From Salpingoeca rosetta (lineage: Eukaryota > Protista > Choanoflagellata): a DNA stretch of 64,000 nucleotides. Position numbers and translations under genes: made by a program. How positions within the stretch are numbered: the first letter of the stretch is position 1; each line of letters opens with the position of its first letter. The notes beneath the pieces are model-generated. The model was not told where the DNA came from, did not search any database, and worked only from the letters and a program-made list of their open reading frames with translations. Shown piece by piece: positions 18,603 through 40,341 of the stretch. The DNA lies in the NCBI GenBank assembly GCA_033442325.1, contig JAWQFM010000007.1, forward strand, positions 228,735 to 292,734, written 5' to 3'.

Positions 18603-21600
18603 ATGAAGAAGCGTAACAAGAACGCAGCCAAACCACCAGCAGCGACTATGACAACAACACCACCAGCACCGTCACTTCGCTTCACGCCCACGATGGCGCG
18701 TGTTCTCGGCATCATCGCGTCTTGCCTGCTGCTGGCAGCAGGCTCAACTGCACAGTCCCTTCGCGATTTCGAGATTGCACACGCCGGATCCACAGACAGC
18801 CCTGCTCCTTCATGTCAGACCCGCTACGCCCCACGCGTGTACGCTGCAGACCCGCCGTGTGGGTTCCAAGACAGGGATGGCACCGTCAGGCTCAGCACAG
18901 GCATTGATCCGGCTGTGCAAGGCGATGCGAGGGCCACGTGCGCATTCTGGCTTCCGTTTACCGTCGCCCACAACACCACCACCCCTGGCCCCAACGGAAC
19001 GACAATCATCACCACAACGTCGTCCTTGAAGTGGTCCTGCTCGTGGCACGGGTGCGAGGCGTCTGCGACGGTGGTTGACGGGGGCAACGCGATTGTGTGC
19101 GCGGTGCCGGGCAACATGCCGACGAACATCACGGCGACGGGGCCGGACGGCAGCCAGGCCGTGCGGGTGACGGTGCGGGTGTGGCACGCGCAATACGCGG
19201 GCGGCAGCGGGGACAGCGCGTGCCAGTCGCACGGCGGAGAGCCACCGGCGCTGTGGGACCAGCACGACTACGTGGTGGCGCACCGCAGCTGCGGGTGCCC
19301 GCCCGGCGTCGGCTACGTCGAGTGCGAGGAGCCCGACATGTGCCGCACGCACCGCTGCCTGGCGCACCCGCGGGCGGTGTGCGAGGTGAGCCACTGCGGG
19401 GTGTGCGCGGTGCGGTTCTACGCGGAGAAGCGCAGCTCGTACGAGGGCGTGGCGCCGCTGGACTGCCTGCCGCGCGACAAGTGCACGGGCGAGTGCCGCA
19501 AGGAGTTTGAGGCGTGCTCGCAGTACACCGGGTGCAGGGAGGCGCTGTACCGGCTGGTGGACGAGCGGGCGTCGTCCGGCACGTGCAACGGCACATGCCA
19601 CGAGCGGCTGGCGGTGCCGACGGAGCCCGGCCGCACGCTGTTTGACCGCGTGTGGTCCTGCTACCGCACGTGCGAGGAGCGGGAGACGGTGCACACGGTG
19701 TGCGCGCTGCCGCCGCGGGCCGGGCAGTGCAAGGGGCGCATGACGCGGTGGTACTTTGACAGGATCACGGGCAAGTGCCGGCAGTTTGCGTATGGCGGGT
19801 GCGGCGGCAACGGCAACAACTTTGAGACGAGGGAGGCGTGCGAGCAGCGGTGCGAGCTCGGGGCGTGCTGCACGCGGCGCACGGTGCTGGACGACGTCGG
19901 GTACGACGCCAACGGGTACGACCAGTTTGGGTACGACCGGCGCGGGTATGCGCGGGACGGGTTCTCGCGGCGGCCGTGGACATACGCGGAGTTTGTGCGA
20001 AACACGTTTGACCTGTTTGGGCTGGACGAGCGCGGGTACGATCCGCGCGGGCTGGACGGGTCTGGGTTCTCCGTGGACGGCATGTCGCAGAACATGAGCC
20101 GCGACGGCCTGCAGTTTGAGTACCTGGAGGAGCAGATGTACGACGCGTGGGGCGTGGACAGGGCCAACATGAGCAGGCAGGGCTTTGACCTGCGCGGGTA
20201 CGGCTACAACGGGCTGTACCGGCAGGCAGAGTACACGTGCCAGCAGACGACGCGGGAGCAGTGCCAGGCGCTGGAGGAGGGCGATCCCAACACAGACGTG
20301 GTGTCGTTTGTGCGCGGGGTGGCGTGCGGGGACAGGCAGTGCGGCAACCCGCAGTGGCAGGAGCCGCGGCAGTGCATCTACCAGGGCCGGCGGTACAACT
20401 ACGGCGAGACGTTCCGCTACGCCTGCCAGTGGTGCGTGTGCGGGACAGACGGGGCGGTGACGTGCCAGTGCACGCCGCGGCGGCGCCGTGAGATAAGGGA
20501 CCTGACGCTTGACGAGGTGCAGACGTACATTGACGCCATCTGGCGCCTGTACAACAGTGGCAACAGGTGGAACGAGTTTGTCAACATGCATCTGGGCGCG
20601 GCAACCACAGCGCATGGCAACCCGACCTTTCTCCCCTGGCACCGAGAATTCACAAACCAGTTTGAGCTTGCGCTGCGGGAGGTGACTGGCAACTGCGACT
20701 TCACGCTGCCCTACTGGGACTGGACAATCGACAGCAGCTCGCCCGAGACCTCGCCTGTGTGGAATCTCATTGGCGGCAATGGCCAGGGTGGCAACAACTG
20801 CGTGCAAGACGGCCCCTTCGCCGGCTTTCGTCCGTGCCTCCGTCGAAACTGGGATTCAAGCGTGTCGATTCCTTCGATCGCAGATGTGACCAACGTGCTG
20901 AGAATCCGGGATTACACCACCATGTCGGCACGACTCGAAGCCATTCACGGCAACGCCCACAACTTCATCGGCAGTCAAATGTCCACCATGTCTGCACCCT
21001 ACGACCCTGTCTTCTTCTTGCATCACGCATACGTCGACAAGCAGTGGTACGACTGGCAAGTCGTGCTCGGAAACGGCAACGACTTTACACCTGAGCGACT
21101 CCACGACACGATGGACCCGTTTCCCAAGACGCCGGCAGACGTGCTTGACAGCGAGGGCCAGCTGTGCGTGGTGTACGAGCCGCCTGGCCGCACGCCGCCC
21201 TGCAACGAGGCACTCTTTGGCGGTTCCTATGAGACAAAGGGATACTACGCACCCGGTGCCCGGCCGCAGTACGACCGCGACGGCTACGACAGGGATGGAT
21301 ATGACAGGCGTGGACTTGACAAGCTCGGGCGGAACCGGGATGGGGTGCGTGTTGGCGGGGTCACTGCGACGGGGTTCAACACGGCCGGAGTGGACAGCCG
21401 CGGGTGCAGCATCATGCATCCGATGCCGCTGTACATGCGCGACGTGTTCCAGGCGCAGCGGGAGCTGTACCGGCGCATCCAGGCCAACGCATATGTGCAG
21501 CCCGCGCGCACGTGCAGCCCACTGCAGCCGCTGCCGGCGTGGTGGAAGGCGTCCATGTGGATGTCGCGCGGCGGGCTGTACGGGGCGATCATGGATGCGT

Positions 21601-23367
21601 ACGAGGCGTACCTCGAGGAGGCGCTGGTGAGGCAGCCGGACGAGTGGCAGCGGGACAGGACGCAGTCGCAGCCGTCGATCCTGGAGGACCTGTGCTTTGC
21701 GGCGGACGACCTGACGCTGCGGCAGGACGACAGCTGGCGGCCGGGCGACGACTACCAGTGCCCGCCCGGCTTGCCGCGGCAGAACTGCGAGTGGAATCCC
21801 TGTGCGAATGCGACGTGTCCCGGGTCGCCGGACGCGACGTGCTGGGTGAACCCCTGCGGGCGGTGCCGGCCCGAGTTCTACCGGGAGGACGGGTCGCGTG
21901 CGCGCTGCTACTCGACGTGCCCGGTGGAGGAGGGCACGTGCACGTTTGACCCGTGCGCGTATGCGACGTGCGAGGCCAACCCGGAGGCCGTGTGCGAGAC
22001 GAGCCCCTGCGGCGGGTGCGAGGTGGAGTGGAGCGACCCTGAGACGGGCGAGCCGGTGACGTGCGATGTTGAGCCGGACTCGTGCGCTGCGCAGGGCCAG
22101 ACGTATGTGTGCGGGGAGGACGGGCAGACGTACGACAACGTGTGCTATGCGCGGGAGGCTGGGGTGAAGATTGCGTACGGGGGGCTGTGCGTTGCGTGCG
22201 AGCGGCTGTGCCCGCCGGAGGGGATGGCGGCCAAGGCGTGCGGCGAGGACTGGCAGACGTATGCGTCTGTGTGCCACGCGCGGTGTGCCGGGGTGAAGGT
22301 TGTTGTACACGGGGGCGTGCCGGCCGCTGCCTGTGACGTGTGAGCAGGTGAACTTCTTCAAGGCGTCTGACGCGGGGCGGCAGCAGCTGTGCAACGAGCA
22401 CACGTCGTGCCTGACGACGGTGGCGCGGAGCGCGGACAACCGGTGTTTCTGGAACGAGGACACGCGGCGGTGCAGCTGCCAGCCGTCGGACGTGGTGTGC
22501 ACGGCTGGTGCGCACGAGTGTGCGCGGTGCTGCAACGACGACCTGCGGCGGTGCCTTCGCTGGGGGCAGGACAGCGTGGACACGTGCTGGCGGGAGGCGT
22601 ACGTTGCGTGCACGGTGCAGTGTGCGGAGGAGTACGATGCAGCCAAGCTGCCGGTAGCCGCGGCCTCTGTTGGCAGTGTTGATGATGGCGATGGCGGCGA
22701 TGGCGGCGATGGAGGGATTAACATCTTCCTTGGAGACGATGACATGGTGCACAGCGGTAACGACACGAACAGCACTGCGCCTGGCCCCACTGGCCCGCTG
22801 GACACGGTTGTGTTCCGTGTTGGGCTGCGCGGACGCCCGAGCACGACGATGGACGCGGCGCAGTTTGCGGAGGCGACAAGCCTTGCTGTTGGGCGGGCGT
22901 CGTTTGTGCCGTCGGCGATGCGTGTAGTTGGGGCGAGCGCGATGGCTGCGGAGCGGCTGGGCAACACCACGGCCGGGGTTGAGCTTGAGGTGAACGCGGA
23001 GAGCAGCGACGGGTACGCGGTGCAGGCTGCGCTTGAGGCCGCGGTGGTGGAGGGCCGGCTGGCAAAGGAGGTGGCCATCTACACCGGCAGCGCCACCACA
23101 GACGACGTCATGCTGGTTGGAGCTGTGGAGGTGATTGAGCCACCAACCACGCCTGCACCGACTGACGATCCAAAGGTCAACCCACGTGAGTCCGATGCAG
23201 CCATCCCGATCCCAGCCATTGCTGGTGTTGTTGCGGCCCTGATTGTAATTGTCGGCTGCATTCTCGCTGTCGCAATTGTTCGCAAGCGCTCATGTGTCCG
23301 CCCGAAAGCGTCAGAGTCGACGTCGCCTGCTGGGCCGCGTGGCGTCACCACCGTTGGCGACAACTGA
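18603..23367 (+). CDS. Intronless multidomain tyrosinase, copy A (signal peptide, IPT-like, Cys repeat, Kunitz, GYD repeats, VWC, tyrosinase, Cys repeats, 2 Kazal, TM); 1-nt frameshift at ~22303
   Basis: ORFs 18603-22343 and 22300-23367 together match copy B. Kunitz domain ~19701-19853 (FAYGGCGGNGNNF). CuA NMH..AHG..FLPWHR and CuB IHGNAH..DPVFFLHH. Kazal motif VCGEDGQTYDNVC. TM IAGVVAALIVIVGCILAVAIV-RKR. The real start may be 18693. Confidence 0.88.
19031..23115 (+). repeat. Left arm of ~4.1 kb inverted duplication
   Basis: Reverse complement of 34461-38544. Paired coordinates sum to 57575 before and 57576 after position ~22303, so the arms are colinear apart from a single 1-nt indel. Confidence 0.95.
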
Positions 23368-23379
23368 TCTGAACCATCG

Positions 23380-23448
<69 letters not shown>

Positions 23449-24013
23449 TGTGTGTTCTGATGCTTGCGATTGTGATCCTTGTACATGCGGTCATTCTTTT
23501 TGCTCTTTGCTGTGCATAGTCTCAGTTTCCCGCGCTGCTTACACAACTGTGTTCTGCCTACACGATCGCCCTTGCCCTACTGATAGCGCCTGTGTATGTG
23601 GGTTTTGTTCTTCCTACCATCGTGGGGTCTCTCTTGTCACCCGTGCGTGCATTGCGGCTGTTTTGTTTGGGAAGCCCCTCTCAAGATTGCTTCATGATGC
23701 GTGCTGCTGGTGCTCTGTTCATCATAGAATGTGCAAACTGTACAATTGCGGCAGATCCTATCAACAGTCATCAAATACGCGTGGTCAGAGGCAAGGCTAA
23801 ATGTGTGTATGTGTGTTGGGGGGAGGGGAACATATGGAAGAAAGCATCATCAAGCTAATGAATCTCACAAAAACGACAGGGACACAAGGCTGGCAAAGCG
23901 GAAGCTGTGAGCGGCACAACAAGGCAGAGCAGCAAGAAATGCTCTGCCCACATGATATTAAGGCAAAGTGACATTGGGAATGGCACTACAGAAAGGGAAT
24001 GCGCGCTACACAC

Positions 24014-32913
<8,900 letters not shown>

Positions 32914-34208
32914 GTGAACAGCAGCGAGGAAGCCCCGCAACCGAGAATGTCCGCGCCCGCAGCAGAGCGCGGGTGACAAGAGCGTCGCGGATGGAATCAC
33001 AACCACGCGCTTCCAGGCCCCAGCATGCGACTACGCAGGAAGAGCAGGAACAGCGCGCGTAATCAGCAGGCGCAGGAGAGGGGTGAAGACGGAAACGACA
33101 CGCCCGAGAGCCGTGCTGTAGATGGGGACGGCGCCGCGCTTCTGCAGTCAACAAGGTGGGATTGTTGCCGTACGCACAGGCACGTACACGCGTACGATCT
33201 GACACGAAGCCAACGCTGATGGGCAAGCAAGAAGCAGGGTACAGAGTGGAGAGCGCCAGACCGTTGTGTGGCCGCAACGTCAAGCACAGGCTCAGCGCAG
33301 GCCGACGCAAAGGTGGAAGCGAGGGGCGGACTTGTCGCAAGATTGTGCGCCCTCTTCGTCTTCTTTGCTTGTTCTTCTTCTTCTTCGCCTCCTTCAGTCG
33401 CTTCACTTGTTGCCGATGCAAGGCACACAATGGAGTCTGATTCTGACGGGTGCGTGCGGTGTGTAGCTCAAGATAGATAGTTACGTCAATCTGCCACCCT
33501 TGTCTCTATGTCTGTCGAGGCATGGGCGAGCGACCTGAGTGAGTGATGTGTGGCTGCTTGCTTGGTTGCTGTGTGTGTGGTTTGTGTGGTGTGTGTGTGT
33601 TTGAATTGGTGGTGTTGCTTGTGCCGTGCGATCACGGAATATTCACGATGCTACCAACAATTCTCAACAAGCACACCACCCAACCACACAAACCAAACGC
33701 CACAACCAACTGCACGCACGCAACGATGTGTGTGTGTGTGGTGTGTGTGTGTGCGTGCTCCCTTGTTGCTTGCTTGCTTGATTGCTTGCTTGCTCCCTCC
33801 CTCGCTTGGTTTGTGCGACTGAGTGTTTACACGTGAGGTTGACCCCGAATGGTGTGGCGGGGCGGAGCGTGCTGCTGGATGACACACCGCCCAAACAGTG
33901 CTTGGCTCACGCACACGCCTGGAACGAGTGAGTGGGTGGCTGTGCGTTTATGAACAGAGCGTAGGCACGCAAGTACACAAGCACGCACGCAAGCGCACGA
34001 GACAACGAGAGATGCACGCCGTGCGTACAGTGTCCATCGAAGCACACAACAGTAAACATGATGGACAACCACGTAAGCCAATTCAAAAACCGATAAGGAC
34101 GCACATCATCTAACCTTCACACAACATGTGAGACAAGGCATCAGGTACGAACAAGAGAAATGTGCAACATCATCAAGATGGCTGTTTCATGTATGCGACA
34201 ACGTCTCA

Positions 34209-39497
<5,289 letters not shown>

Positions 39498-40341
39498 GTT
39501 CTCGAGTTTGCTCCGATCTTTCGCTCCTGTCTTGCCTGTGCCTTTGCCCTCTGGTTCGATGCGTGCCCTCACACACACACACATACATACACACAGACAC
39601 ACACACACACTCTCTCTCTCTCTCTCGCTTGAGCAGCTTTGAGCTCTCTTCTGCTCGCTCCTGCTTGTTCCCCTTGCTCACCTGTTGGTCTCGATGCGAG
39701 TGTGTTGTGCGCTGTGTTGGTGTGATGCACACGGAACGTGTTCTCGAGGATGTGTCTCGCAGAAACCTTGCTCAGATCAGGTGGTCAAGCCGAGAAATGA
39801 ACGGTGCAACACGAACCCACCACCCCAGGTTTTCTCATGCGTTGCTTGCGGATAGCTGGCTTCTGCTTGGGCCCTGCGCTTGTGCGGTTGTGTGCTTGCT
39901 TTAAGTGCCGTTGACGAGCCGAGTGGTCAGCACATTGGCGCGGTGTGTCACGTCACACAACGCCCACAGCACACTGCGTGCAGGCGTGCGTGGCCTTGTG
40001 CATGCATCGCGCTGGTCATGGTTGCTGGTGGCGTGCACACTGTTGTGGGAAGGTCGTTTGTGCGTTGTTGTTTTGGTCTGCGAGGTGCGTGCCAGCAGAA
40101 AAATTGTGGTGTCGTTTGAGAAATTTGCCTAAGCTGTTGTTTTGGACAGTTGAACGCATACACTGCTTCTGTCCATCTTTGGCTGCTGTGTATTTTCGTA
40201 AGAGGCACACACCAACGAACGACAAGCAAGGCAAGGCAAGGAAGAAACCAGAGCCAAGACAGGAACATACCAGAACACAACAACAAAGCAGGTCTGTAGG
40301 CAACGAGGAACAGCGAGCGCAGGTCAAACAAGGCACGTACG

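What the first reader, a model, noticed from the sequence alone, without database searches (positions are those of the whole stretch)
20590..21320. Inverted paralogs are near-identical everywhere except the catalytic domain
Seen, by manual comparison: about 46 amino-acid differences in the ~170-aa CuA-CuB core, and about 50 within 20590-21320 vs 36255-36985. Only about 6 differences occur over the remaining ~1,000+ shared residues, and there are no indels in the core. Changes crowd the substrate-pocket segments (HLGAATTAH vs HLSASASAH; LEAIHGNAHNFIGSQMSTMS vs LEGIHGNTHTWIRGLMSTYS) while all His ligands are kept. Many synonymous changes occur in the core too. This reverses the usual pattern of conserved catalytic domains. 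Inference: an old duplication whose flanks are homogenised by gene conversion between the inverted arms, while selection keeps two enzyme specificities apart.
Basis: partly seen in the sequence, partly recalled or inferred. Interest (0 to 1): 0.8.

Follow-up and report, generated by a model that had tools for sequence, protein, structure and literature searches.

The report
Mosaic inverted tyrosinase paralogs, gene conversion
Two ancient, oppositely oriented copies of a membrane tyrosinase gene in the choanoflagellate Salpingoeca rosetta are kept almost identical over two long stretches by copy-to-copy gene conversion. The catalytic core and both gene ends stay old and different, which is a well-known kind of pattern found here in a new gene family.

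Summary
The window is Salpingoeca rosetta, and the copies are PTSG_11341 (A, + strand) and PTSG_11343 (B, - strand).

- **Clustering of differences.** Within the inverted arms (A 19031-23120, B 38544-34456), 126 of 144 nucleotide differences fall in 20591-21326. There are 46 amino-acid changes in the 171 codons from the first CuA histidine to just past the last CuB histidine. The region has no indels and all six histidine ligands are kept.
- **Rates.** Core dS is 0.77 and dN/dS is 0.25. Flank dS is about 0.013.
- **Assembly check.** Contigs from four independent public runs show both cores at similar depth. The shared flanks are single contigs at roughly double depth, so this is not an assembly artefact.
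- **Qualifications.** The gene ends outside the arms are even more diverged (pS about 0.7). The core itself is a fine mosaic. The differences sit mostly at family-variable positions, and both copies evolve at equal rates.

An old duplication with recurrent gene conversion of the flanks is well supported. Selection keeping two enzyme specificities apart is plausible but unproven, and I put it at about 50%. This is the known "island of divergence under gene conversion" pattern described by Teshima and Innan.

The scan's first readers noted many other patchwork-conversion cases in this genome. The frameshift in copy A at 22303 is probably a reference error.

The parts
18603..23367 (+). Copy A gene (PTSG_11341). 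Domain order: signal peptide, Cys-rich region, Kunitz, GYD repeats, tyrosinase, Kazal, C-terminal TM anchor. The reference carries a 1-nt frameshift at 22303.
   Evidence: ORF and translation. 100% match to P0001. Pfam Kunitz, Tyrosinase and Kazal_2. C-terminal frame.
34209..39497 (-). Copy B gene (PTSG_11343). Same architecture as copy A, plus a long Thr-rich N-terminal stretch and a different TM anchor and tail.
19031..20590 (+). Homogenised block 1 of arm A, paired with B 38544-36985. There are 5 differences in 1340 comparable nt.
   Evidence: Present as one 1560-nt contig in independent runs, starting and ending exactly at these edges.
20591..21116 (+). Dense divergence island in A, running from the third base of the HisA1 codon to 31 codons past HisB3. 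It carries 46 aa changes, dS 0.77 and dN/dS 0.25. The densest part is 20771-20990, at 34% nt divergence.
   Evidence: The Pfam tyrosinase match is aa 654-819, which equals nt 20562-21059.
36459..36984 (-). The same dense island in copy B.
   Evidence: The B-form 136-nt contig is present in all four runs at a depth like the A form.
21117..21326 (+). Transition zone with intermediate divergence (dS 0.16). It holds two mini-islands, 21212-21242 and 21305-21326, between identical stretches.
21327..23120 (+). Homogenised block 2 of arm A, paired with B 36248-34456. There are about 13 differences.
   Evidence: Present as one 2094-nt contig covering 21021-23115 in all four runs.
34456..38544 (-). Arm B as a whole.
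37241..37460 (.). Assembly gap (220 N) in arm B. Its length equals exactly the matching stretch A 20115-20334.
   Evidence: Independent contigs cross the matching A stretch unbroken at double depth.
22303..22304 (+). 1-nt insertion plus substitution in reference copy A that truncates ORF A at 22343. It is probably an assembly error.
   Evidence: The base is left out in contigs of all four runs, and three of them keep the A-type T at 22304.
18603..19030 (+). Diverged 5' part of A, homologous to B 38545-38780. It shows 59% aa identity, pS 0.71, and an indel next to the arm edge.
23121..23367 (+). Diverged 3' part of A (stalk, TM anchor, tail), compared with B 34455-34209. It shows pS 0.74 and an indel next to the arm edge.

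Best explanation
PTSG_11341 and PTSG_11343 are ancient whole-gene duplicates. They lie tail-to-tail, with 11.3 kb between the arms. Each encodes a membrane-anchored Kunitz-tyrosinase-Kazal protein.

Recurrent interlocus (arm-to-arm) gene conversion keeps two intragenic blocks of about 1.5 and 1.8 kb at 99.3% identity or more. The N-terminal part, the CuA-CuB catalytic core and the C-terminal anchor have escaped conversion and keep old divergence. Both cores remain intact enzymes under purifying selection.

The central island most likely arose, and persists, because conversions that overwrite the core were selected against. That would make the two copies distinct tyrosinase variants, in the sense of the Teshima-Innan 'neofunctionalisation under gene conversion' model. 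Today the 24-34% mismatch density also blocks conversion by itself.

**Shown:** the mosaic, its reality in independent data, the age contrast, and the intactness of both cores.
**Inferred:** conversion as the homogenising process, and selection as the reason for the island.
For: **Age contrast.**
- dS is 0.77 in the core and 0.013 in the flanks.
- The gene ends are saturated.
- The clustering of differences is far beyond chance.
- A-B aa identity is 73% in the core and 99-100% in the flanks, while both copies are equally far from paralogs P0003, P0004 and P0007 in every block.
- In the core tree A and B are not even resolved as sisters.

**Reality of the assembly.**
- Both cores and the shared flanks are seen in four runs from four studies, with a depth ratio of roughly 2:1 in three of the four runs (about 1.2:1 in X16).
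- About 20 runs from 9 studies hold each core.

**Base composition.**
- GC3 steps coincide with the identity edges in both copies (0.91-0.94 against 0.66-0.73).
- Polarised third-position changes in the cores are 17 S>W against 4 W>S. This fits the known GC-biased signature of converted regions (PMC2720389).

**For selection.**
- The core is the most conserved block between paralog lineages (61% against 43-55%), yet it is the diverged one here.
- The island matches the Pfam domain, with about 0.02 probability by random placement (my own arithmetic, not a tool result, and post hoc).
- There are no indels.
- The copies differ at HisB2+1 (Asn in A, Thr in B), the '2nd activity controller' of PMC7331820.
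- Each copy departs from a near-invariant GG that follows HisB2.
- In the sister pair P0003/P0006 the core is homogenised, so the core is not mechanically refractory to conversion.
- Flank divergence below 1%, against saturated unconverted parts, implies a conversion rate far above the mutation rate. Under that condition neutral escape of an internal segment is unlikely (theory: Teshima and Innan, as cited in PMC3728101).
Against: - There is no positive-selection signal: dN/dS is 0.25 and never exceeds about 0.45 in any window.
- Rates are symmetric.
- The changed sites are enriched at family-variable columns (entropy 2.36 against 1.72, P = 2e-4), as neutral drift predicts.
- The largest cluster of changes lies in a long loop (model residues 134-169) rather than at the copper ligands.
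- Mini-islands in linker regions here, and islands in non-catalytic regions of the P0003/P0006 pair, show that patchy escape happens without an obvious functional reason.
- High GC3 is the family norm: singleton P0004 has 0.83-0.97. The GC3 argument for conversion is therefore weaker than it looks.
- There are no orthologues, population data, expression data or enzyme data.
Confidence: 0.5

Rival explanations
1. This rival has the same ancient duplicates and the same recurrent conversion, but the island is neutral. It would be a leftover of patchy, short-tract conversion that became self-protecting once mismatches exceeded the homology needed for heteroduplex formation. The two enzymes would do the same job.
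For: - dN/dS is 0.25, rates are symmetric, and changes lie at family-variable sites.
- The mosaic is fine-grained, with identical micro-tracts inside the core and tiny islands outside it.
- The sister pair has islands in non-catalytic regions.
- First-stage readers noted many patchwork-identity paralog pairs in this genome (those notes are unchecked).
Against: - The escaped segment is the slowest-evolving block of the protein family, not a fast one.
- There is no indel to start a barrier.
- With flanks held below 1% divergence over a time long enough to saturate the unconverted parts, neutral internal escape should be rare.
- The coincidence with the catalytic domain would be chance (about 0.02).
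Confidence: 0.33
2. This rival posits a recent duplication of the 4.1-kb segment, after which the core of one copy was overwritten by conversion from a third, diverged tyrosinase paralog.
For: - A and B are not resolved as sisters in the core tree.
- S. rosetta has further paralogs.
Against: - No protein in the searched length ranges (177-562 aa and 685-2180 aa) is closer than 61% to either core.
- Both cores are equidistant from all known paralogs.
- The sequence outside the arms is homologous but saturated, so the genes themselves are old duplicates.
- Conversion from a donor that is 16-34% diverged is mechanistically unlikely.
Confidence: 0.07
3. This rival is an assembly artefact. The flanks would really be divergent, or the two copies would be alleles, and the identity would come from read sharing in the 2011-era assembly.
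For: - Arm B has an N gap whose length exactly equals the matching sequence in A.
- There is a probable reference error at 22303.
Against: - In four runs from four studies the flanks form single contigs bounded exactly at the arm and island edges. They carry only the known paralogous variants.
- Both core forms are present at similar depth, and the flanks run at roughly twice the unique depth in three of the four runs (X7: 245-274 against 127-158). In X16 the ratio is only about 1.2:1.
- Unique sequence continues from each arm end in those contigs.
Confidence: 0.03

Closest known systems
Islands of divergence between duplicates under ongoing gene conversion. Theory: Teshima and Innan 2008; Innan 2003. 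Examples: human RHD/RHCE, red/green opsins, yeast heat-shock pairs, copepod GOT1p1/p2. All as summarised in PMC3728101.
   Same: - Paralogs are kept near-identical by interlocus conversion, apart from a short exonic block without indels where both synonymous and non-synonymous differences pile up.
- The island is no wider than about one conversion tract.
   Different: - Here the island is a whole catalytic domain of about 0.5-0.7 kb at very high divergence (pS up to 0.68).
- No functional difference is known.
- The organism is a choanoflagellate and the family is an uncharacterised Kunitz-tyrosinase-Kazal surface protein.
Mosaic mammalian gene pairs with concerted and divergent regions (BMP8A/B, DDX19A/B, TUBG1/2; PMC2720389).
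   Same: - Exactly two copies.
- Sharp switches between homogenised and diverged regions.
- Higher GC3 in the homogenised parts.
   Different: - Those cases were proven with orthologues from many species, and none are available here.
- The GC3 control (paralog P0004) is ambiguous here.
Palindrome arms with arm-to-arm conversion, such as the ampliconic palindromes of sex chromosomes (named from general knowledge).
   Same: Inverted repeats of a few kb around a spacer, kept above 99% identical by intrachromosomal conversion.
   Different: - The arms here are wholly intragenic. They begin and end inside coding sequence.
- They are interrupted by an old island.
- The gene ends and the spacer are unique.
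Isoenzyme pairs of type-3 copper polyphenol oxidases with different substrate preference (walnut jrPPO1/jrPPO2; PMC7331820).
   Same: - Two tyrosinase paralogs that are about 73% identical in the core.
- All copper ligands are kept.
- They differ at 'activity controller' positions next to the CuB histidines.
   Different: - In walnut the decisive site is HisB1+1. Here HisB1+1 is Gly in both copies and HisB2+1 differs (Asn in A, Thr in B).
- No enzyme assays exist for the choanoflagellate proteins.

Membership tests
Type-3 copper tyrosinase (Pfam PF00264) | Profile match above the curated cut-off | tested here: met
   A scores 125 bits and B 121 bits, against a cut-off of 22.6.
Type-3 copper tyrosinase (Pfam PF00264) | Six histidine ligands (three at CuA, three at CuB) | tested here: met
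   His at model residues 74, 82, 91, 193, 197 and 218 in both copies. HisA1-HisA2 spacing is only 8 residues, but this is conserved in the family consensus.
Type-3 copper tyrosinase (Pfam PF00264) | Tyrosinase fold | tested here: met
   The AF2 model has pLDDT 86. Foldseek matches Streptomyces and Priestia (Bacillus) megaterium tyrosinases, with target-normalised TM 0.70-0.76 (0.60-0.67 by model length) and E about 1e-13.
Type-3 copper tyrosinase (Pfam PF00264) | Phenol or catechol oxidase activity | not testable with these tools
   Needs expression and assay.
Interlocus gene conversion (concerted evolution) mosaic | Paralog divergence is significantly heterogeneous along the gene, at synonymous sites too | tested here: met
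   dS is 0.77 against 0.013. Maximum chi-square is 583 against at most 31 in permutations.
Interlocus gene conversion (concerted evolution) mosaic | Homogenised parts are younger than the duplication (trees disagree between blocks) | tested here: met
   The ratio of A-B distance to A-outgroup distance is about 0.7 in the core and N-terminal part and about 0.01 in the flanks. In the core tree A and B are deep.
Interlocus gene conversion (concerted evolution) mosaic | Across species, flanks cluster by species and unconverted parts by copy | not testable with these tools
   No orthologues closer than 51-59% were found in two protein searches.
Interlocus gene conversion (concerted evolution) mosaic | Raised GC3 in converted parts (GC-biased conversion) | tested here: inconclusive
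   GC3 steps coincide with the identity edges, and the cores show an excess of S>W changes. However, paralogs P0004 and P0003 have high GC3 throughout their bodies.
Selection-maintained island (Teshima-Innan) | Island in exonic sequence, without indels or another structural block to conversion | tested here: met
   654 codons align without gaps. The sister pair has a homogenised core.
Selection-maintained island (Teshima-Innan) | Functional difference between the copies that maps to the island | not tested
   Only indirect evidence exists. HisB2+1 is Asn in A and Thr in B, and the near-invariant GG after HisB2 is altered differently in each copy. dN/dS is 0.25.

The most novel reading that the evidence does not exclude
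The genes are convergent and the homogenised blocks are inverted repeats. A crossover, rather than a conversion, in block 1 or block 2 would therefore flip the spacer and reassort the three old, divergent modules: N-terminal stalk, catalytic core and membrane anchor. The conserved blocks would then act as recombination hinges. Cells could carry up to four combinations of two tyrosinase cores with different stalks and anchors, and selection would keep the cores distinct.
Probability: 0.07. Interest if true: 0.65.

Novelty: new member of a known kind. Interest (0 to 1): 0.36.

Why it matters
If selection really protects the island, this locus points to two functionally distinct surface tyrosinases in a close relative of animals. 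It would also give a ready-made natural experiment, with the same scaffold carrying different catalytic cores, for asking what these uncharacterised Kunitz-tyrosinase-Kazal proteins oxidise. Matrix or theca cross-linking is a reasonable guess.

More modestly, it documents long-lasting interlocus gene conversion in a choanoflagellate. It also flags annotation errors in two gene models. It does not reveal a new kind of mechanism.

Tried and rejected
- **Assembly artefact or allelic collapse.** Rejected on independent contigs and depth.
- **Third-party donor for one core.** Two protein searches found nothing closer than 61% to either core. Lengths 563-684 aa and above 2180 aa, and unannotated loci, were not covered. 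I ran no further search on this.
- **Positive selection.** Nei-Gojobori windows never exceed a dN/dS of about 0.45, and Tajima's relative-rate test is symmetric.
- **GC-biased conversion as proof of sustained conversion.** Weakened by paralog controls with high GC3 everywhere.
- **3D mapping of the 46 changes around the copper site.** Model coordinates are not exposed to scripts. The residue-level PDB alignments printed were only for hemocyanins. Only motif-relative positions and secondary-structure elements could be used.
- **Expression of both copies.** All runs were contig sets and probably DNA, so nothing can be said. No paper mentions the locus tags.
- **Genes in the spacer.** Ten ORFs gave no Pfam hit.
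- **Literature on S. rosetta tyrosinases.** Nothing relevant.

Full report
**What the window is.** A protein search identifies the two long ORFs as Salpingoeca rosetta PTSG_11341 and PTSG_11343, both on a 321-kb scaffold. PTSG_11341 is copy A (18603-23367, + strand) and matches at 100%. PTSG_11343 is copy B (39497-34209, - strand). Both carry Kunitz, tyrosinase and Kazal domains and a C-terminal membrane anchor. The genes are convergent.

**Checking the observation.**
- Inverted-repeat search and blastn define the arms as A 19031-23120 and B 38544-34456. B has a 220-N gap at 37241-37460.
- A gap-free codon comparison gives 46 amino-acid differences in the 171 codons 20595-21105 and 50 within 20590-21320. 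There are 3 in the other 844 compared codons before 22300 and about 6 in the 271 codons after it.
- Of 144 nucleotide differences in 3870 comparable sites, 126 lie in 20591-21326. The maximum chi-square is 583, against at most 31 in 200 permutations.
- Nei-Gojobori estimates are dS 0.77, dN 0.19 and dN/dS 0.25 for the core, and dS 0.013 and dN 0.002 for the flanks.
- The first difference is the third base of the HisA1 codon. The dense block ends 31 codons after HisB3.
- All six His are kept in both copies.

- *The gene ends differ too.* Outside the arms the genes are still homologous but far more diverged. The N-terminal Cys-rich piece shows 59% aa identity and pS 0.71. The stalk, TM and tail show pS 0.74. 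Both outer arm edges abut indels. The pair is therefore a five-block mosaic: old, young, old, young, old.
- *The island is patchy.* Its heart, 20771-20990, is 34% diverged and as old as the gene ends. The CuA part is less diverged (pS about 0.48). Stretches 20700-20768 and 21021-21079 are identical even at synonymous sites. Two tiny islands, 21212-21242 and 21305-21326, sit in the linker after the domain.

**Is it real?**
- Each core is held by about 20 public runs from 9 studies, and several runs hold both.
- Contigs of four runs from four studies were laid on A 18900-23400. They show one contig for 19031-20590 and one for 21021-23115, bounded exactly at the arm and island edges.
- Both forms of the core start (0 and 22 other letters) are present in every run at similar depth.
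- Shared parts run at roughly twice the depth of unique parts in three of the four runs (X7: 245-274 against 127-158). In X16 the ratio is only about 1.2:1.
- Only the known paralogous variants appear in the flanks.
- The contig crosses the stretch that matches B's gap without a break.
- The assembly-artefact reading is therefore essentially excluded.
- All four runs lack the extra T at 22303, and three keep the A-type T at 22304. The frameshift that truncates ORF A is thus most likely a reference error. The annotated model bridges it with an artificial intron.

**How old are the blocks?**
- Against the other S. rosetta paralogs (P0003, P0004) and a metagenomic relative (P0007), A and B are equidistant in every block.
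- The A-B distance is about 70% of the A-outgroup distance in the core and N-terminal part, but about 1% in the flanks.
- In a maximum-likelihood tree of the core, A and B are not even resolved as sisters. Their distance (about 0.36) is close to that between P0003 and P0007 (0.44).
- The duplication is therefore ancient and the flank identity is secondary.
- In-register, indel-free replacement of two blocks inside coding sequence can hardly arise other than by homologous recombination, that is, by interlocus gene conversion. This step is inference, and it follows the standard reasoning for mosaic pairs (PMC2720389).

**Base composition.**
- GC3 jumps from about 0.65 to 0.93-1.0 at 19031. It falls to 0.62-0.80 across the island, rises again at about 21365, and falls to about 0.5 after 23120. 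This happens in both copies.
- Polarised third-position changes in the cores are 17 strong-to-weak against 4 weak-to-strong.
- This fits GC-biased conversion acting for a long time on the flanks.
- However, paralog P0004 has GC3 of 0.83-0.97 along its body, core included, and P0003 has 0.70-0.89. I therefore treat this as consistent, not decisive.

**Is the island kept by selection?**

*For selection:*
- Between paralog lineages the core is the most conserved block (61% against 43-55%), yet it is the block that escaped conversion.
- The island coincides with the Pfam domain, about 0.02 by random placement (my own arithmetic, post hoc).
- There is no indel that could start a barrier.
- The sister pair P0003/P0006 is also inverted, about 50 kb apart. 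Its core is homogenised, with 3 differences in 1 kb.
- The copies differ at HisB2+1 (Asn in A, Thr in B), a position shown to tune activity in plant enzymes (PMC7331820).
- Each copy alters one residue of a near-invariant Gly-Gly after HisB2.
- Flanks below 1% divergence, beside saturated unconverted parts, imply a conversion rate much greater than the mutation rate. Under that condition theory says internal neutral escape is unlikely (Teshima and Innan, as cited in PMC3728101).

*Against selection:*
- dN/dS is 0.25, with no window above about 0.45.
- Rates are symmetric, 11 against 12.
- The changes are enriched at family-variable columns (P = 2e-4).
- The biggest cluster of changes is in a long loop.
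- Mini-islands here, and islands in non-catalytic parts of the sister pair, show patchiness without an obvious function.
- First-stage notes list many patchwork paralog pairs in this genome (unchecked).

I put selection at about 0.5 and a neutral leftover at about 0.33.

**Structure.** An AF2 model of the domain (pLDDT 86) matches bacterial tyrosinases with target-normalised TM 0.70-0.76.

**Comparison and novelty.**
- The pattern is the textbook 'island of divergence under gene conversion'. Known examples are RHD/RHCE, the opsins, yeast heat-shock pairs, copepod GOT1 (PMC3728101) and the mosaic mammalian pairs (PMC2720389).
- It is new for choanoflagellates and for this protein family, so it is a new member of a known kind.
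- No paper mentions these loci.

**Not done.** Expression, enzyme activity, orthologue trees and long-read confirmation remain open.

Noticed in passing
window 22303-22304: The frameshift that ends ORF A at 22343 is absent from contigs of all four independent runs. Copy A is probably intact. The annotated PTSG_11341 model bridges the site with an artificial intron that removes about 25 residues of the second Kazal-like module.
   Followed up: yes
window 37241-37460: The N gap in arm B is exactly as long (220 nt) as the matching stretch of arm A, and it keeps the reading frame offset. Independent contigs suggest the missing sequence equals A's. The PTSG_11343 model skips the gap as an intron and starts inside the arm.
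   Followed up: partly
L002 11453-14334 and L003 19942-22856 (scaffold GL832969): A second inverted pair of the same family lies about 50 kb apart: the P0003 'protease inhibitor' gene and the P0006/PTSG_12389 locus. It is also a mosaic, but there the tyrosinase core is near-identical and the diverged patches lie elsewhere. L003 holds a 12.4-kb N gap.
   Followed up: partly
window 19031-23120 and 34456-38544: GC3 steps (0.93 against 0.66-0.73 against about 0.5) coincide with the identity edges in both copies. Because other paralogs have high GC3 throughout, the unusual feature is the low GC3 of the two cores. Their third-position changes are 17 strong-to-weak against 4 weak-to-strong.
   Followed up: partly
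window 21212-21242, 21305-21326, 22736-22740: These are tiny islands of 5-31 nt, with 20-80% of positions differing, inside otherwise identical sequence. Each changes two adjacent residues (SY/TF, RR/EN, DD/GV). They could be remnants spared by conversion tracts or multi-nucleotide mutations.
   Followed up: no
window 23381-23455, 33565-33757, 39570-39610: (GT)n microsatellite runs flank the 3' end of gene A, the far side of the spacer and the 5' end of gene B.
   Followed up: no
window 38800-39200 (- strand): Copy B has a long Thr-rich (mucin-like) N-terminal stretch, including a run of about 40 Thr, with GC3 down to 0.1. It is absent from copy A.
   Followed up: no
P0005, P0010, P0014: The same Kunitz, GYD-repeat and tyrosinase arrangement occurs in proteins of a hemichordate (Ptychodera flava) and of several teleost fishes, at 33-38% identity over the domain. 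The architecture therefore predates animals or has been retained in deuterostomes.
   Followed up: no
window 24000-26000: A low-GC stretch (0.41) with a 604-N gap lies in the spacer between the arms. Ten spacer ORFs had no Pfam match.
   Followed up: partly
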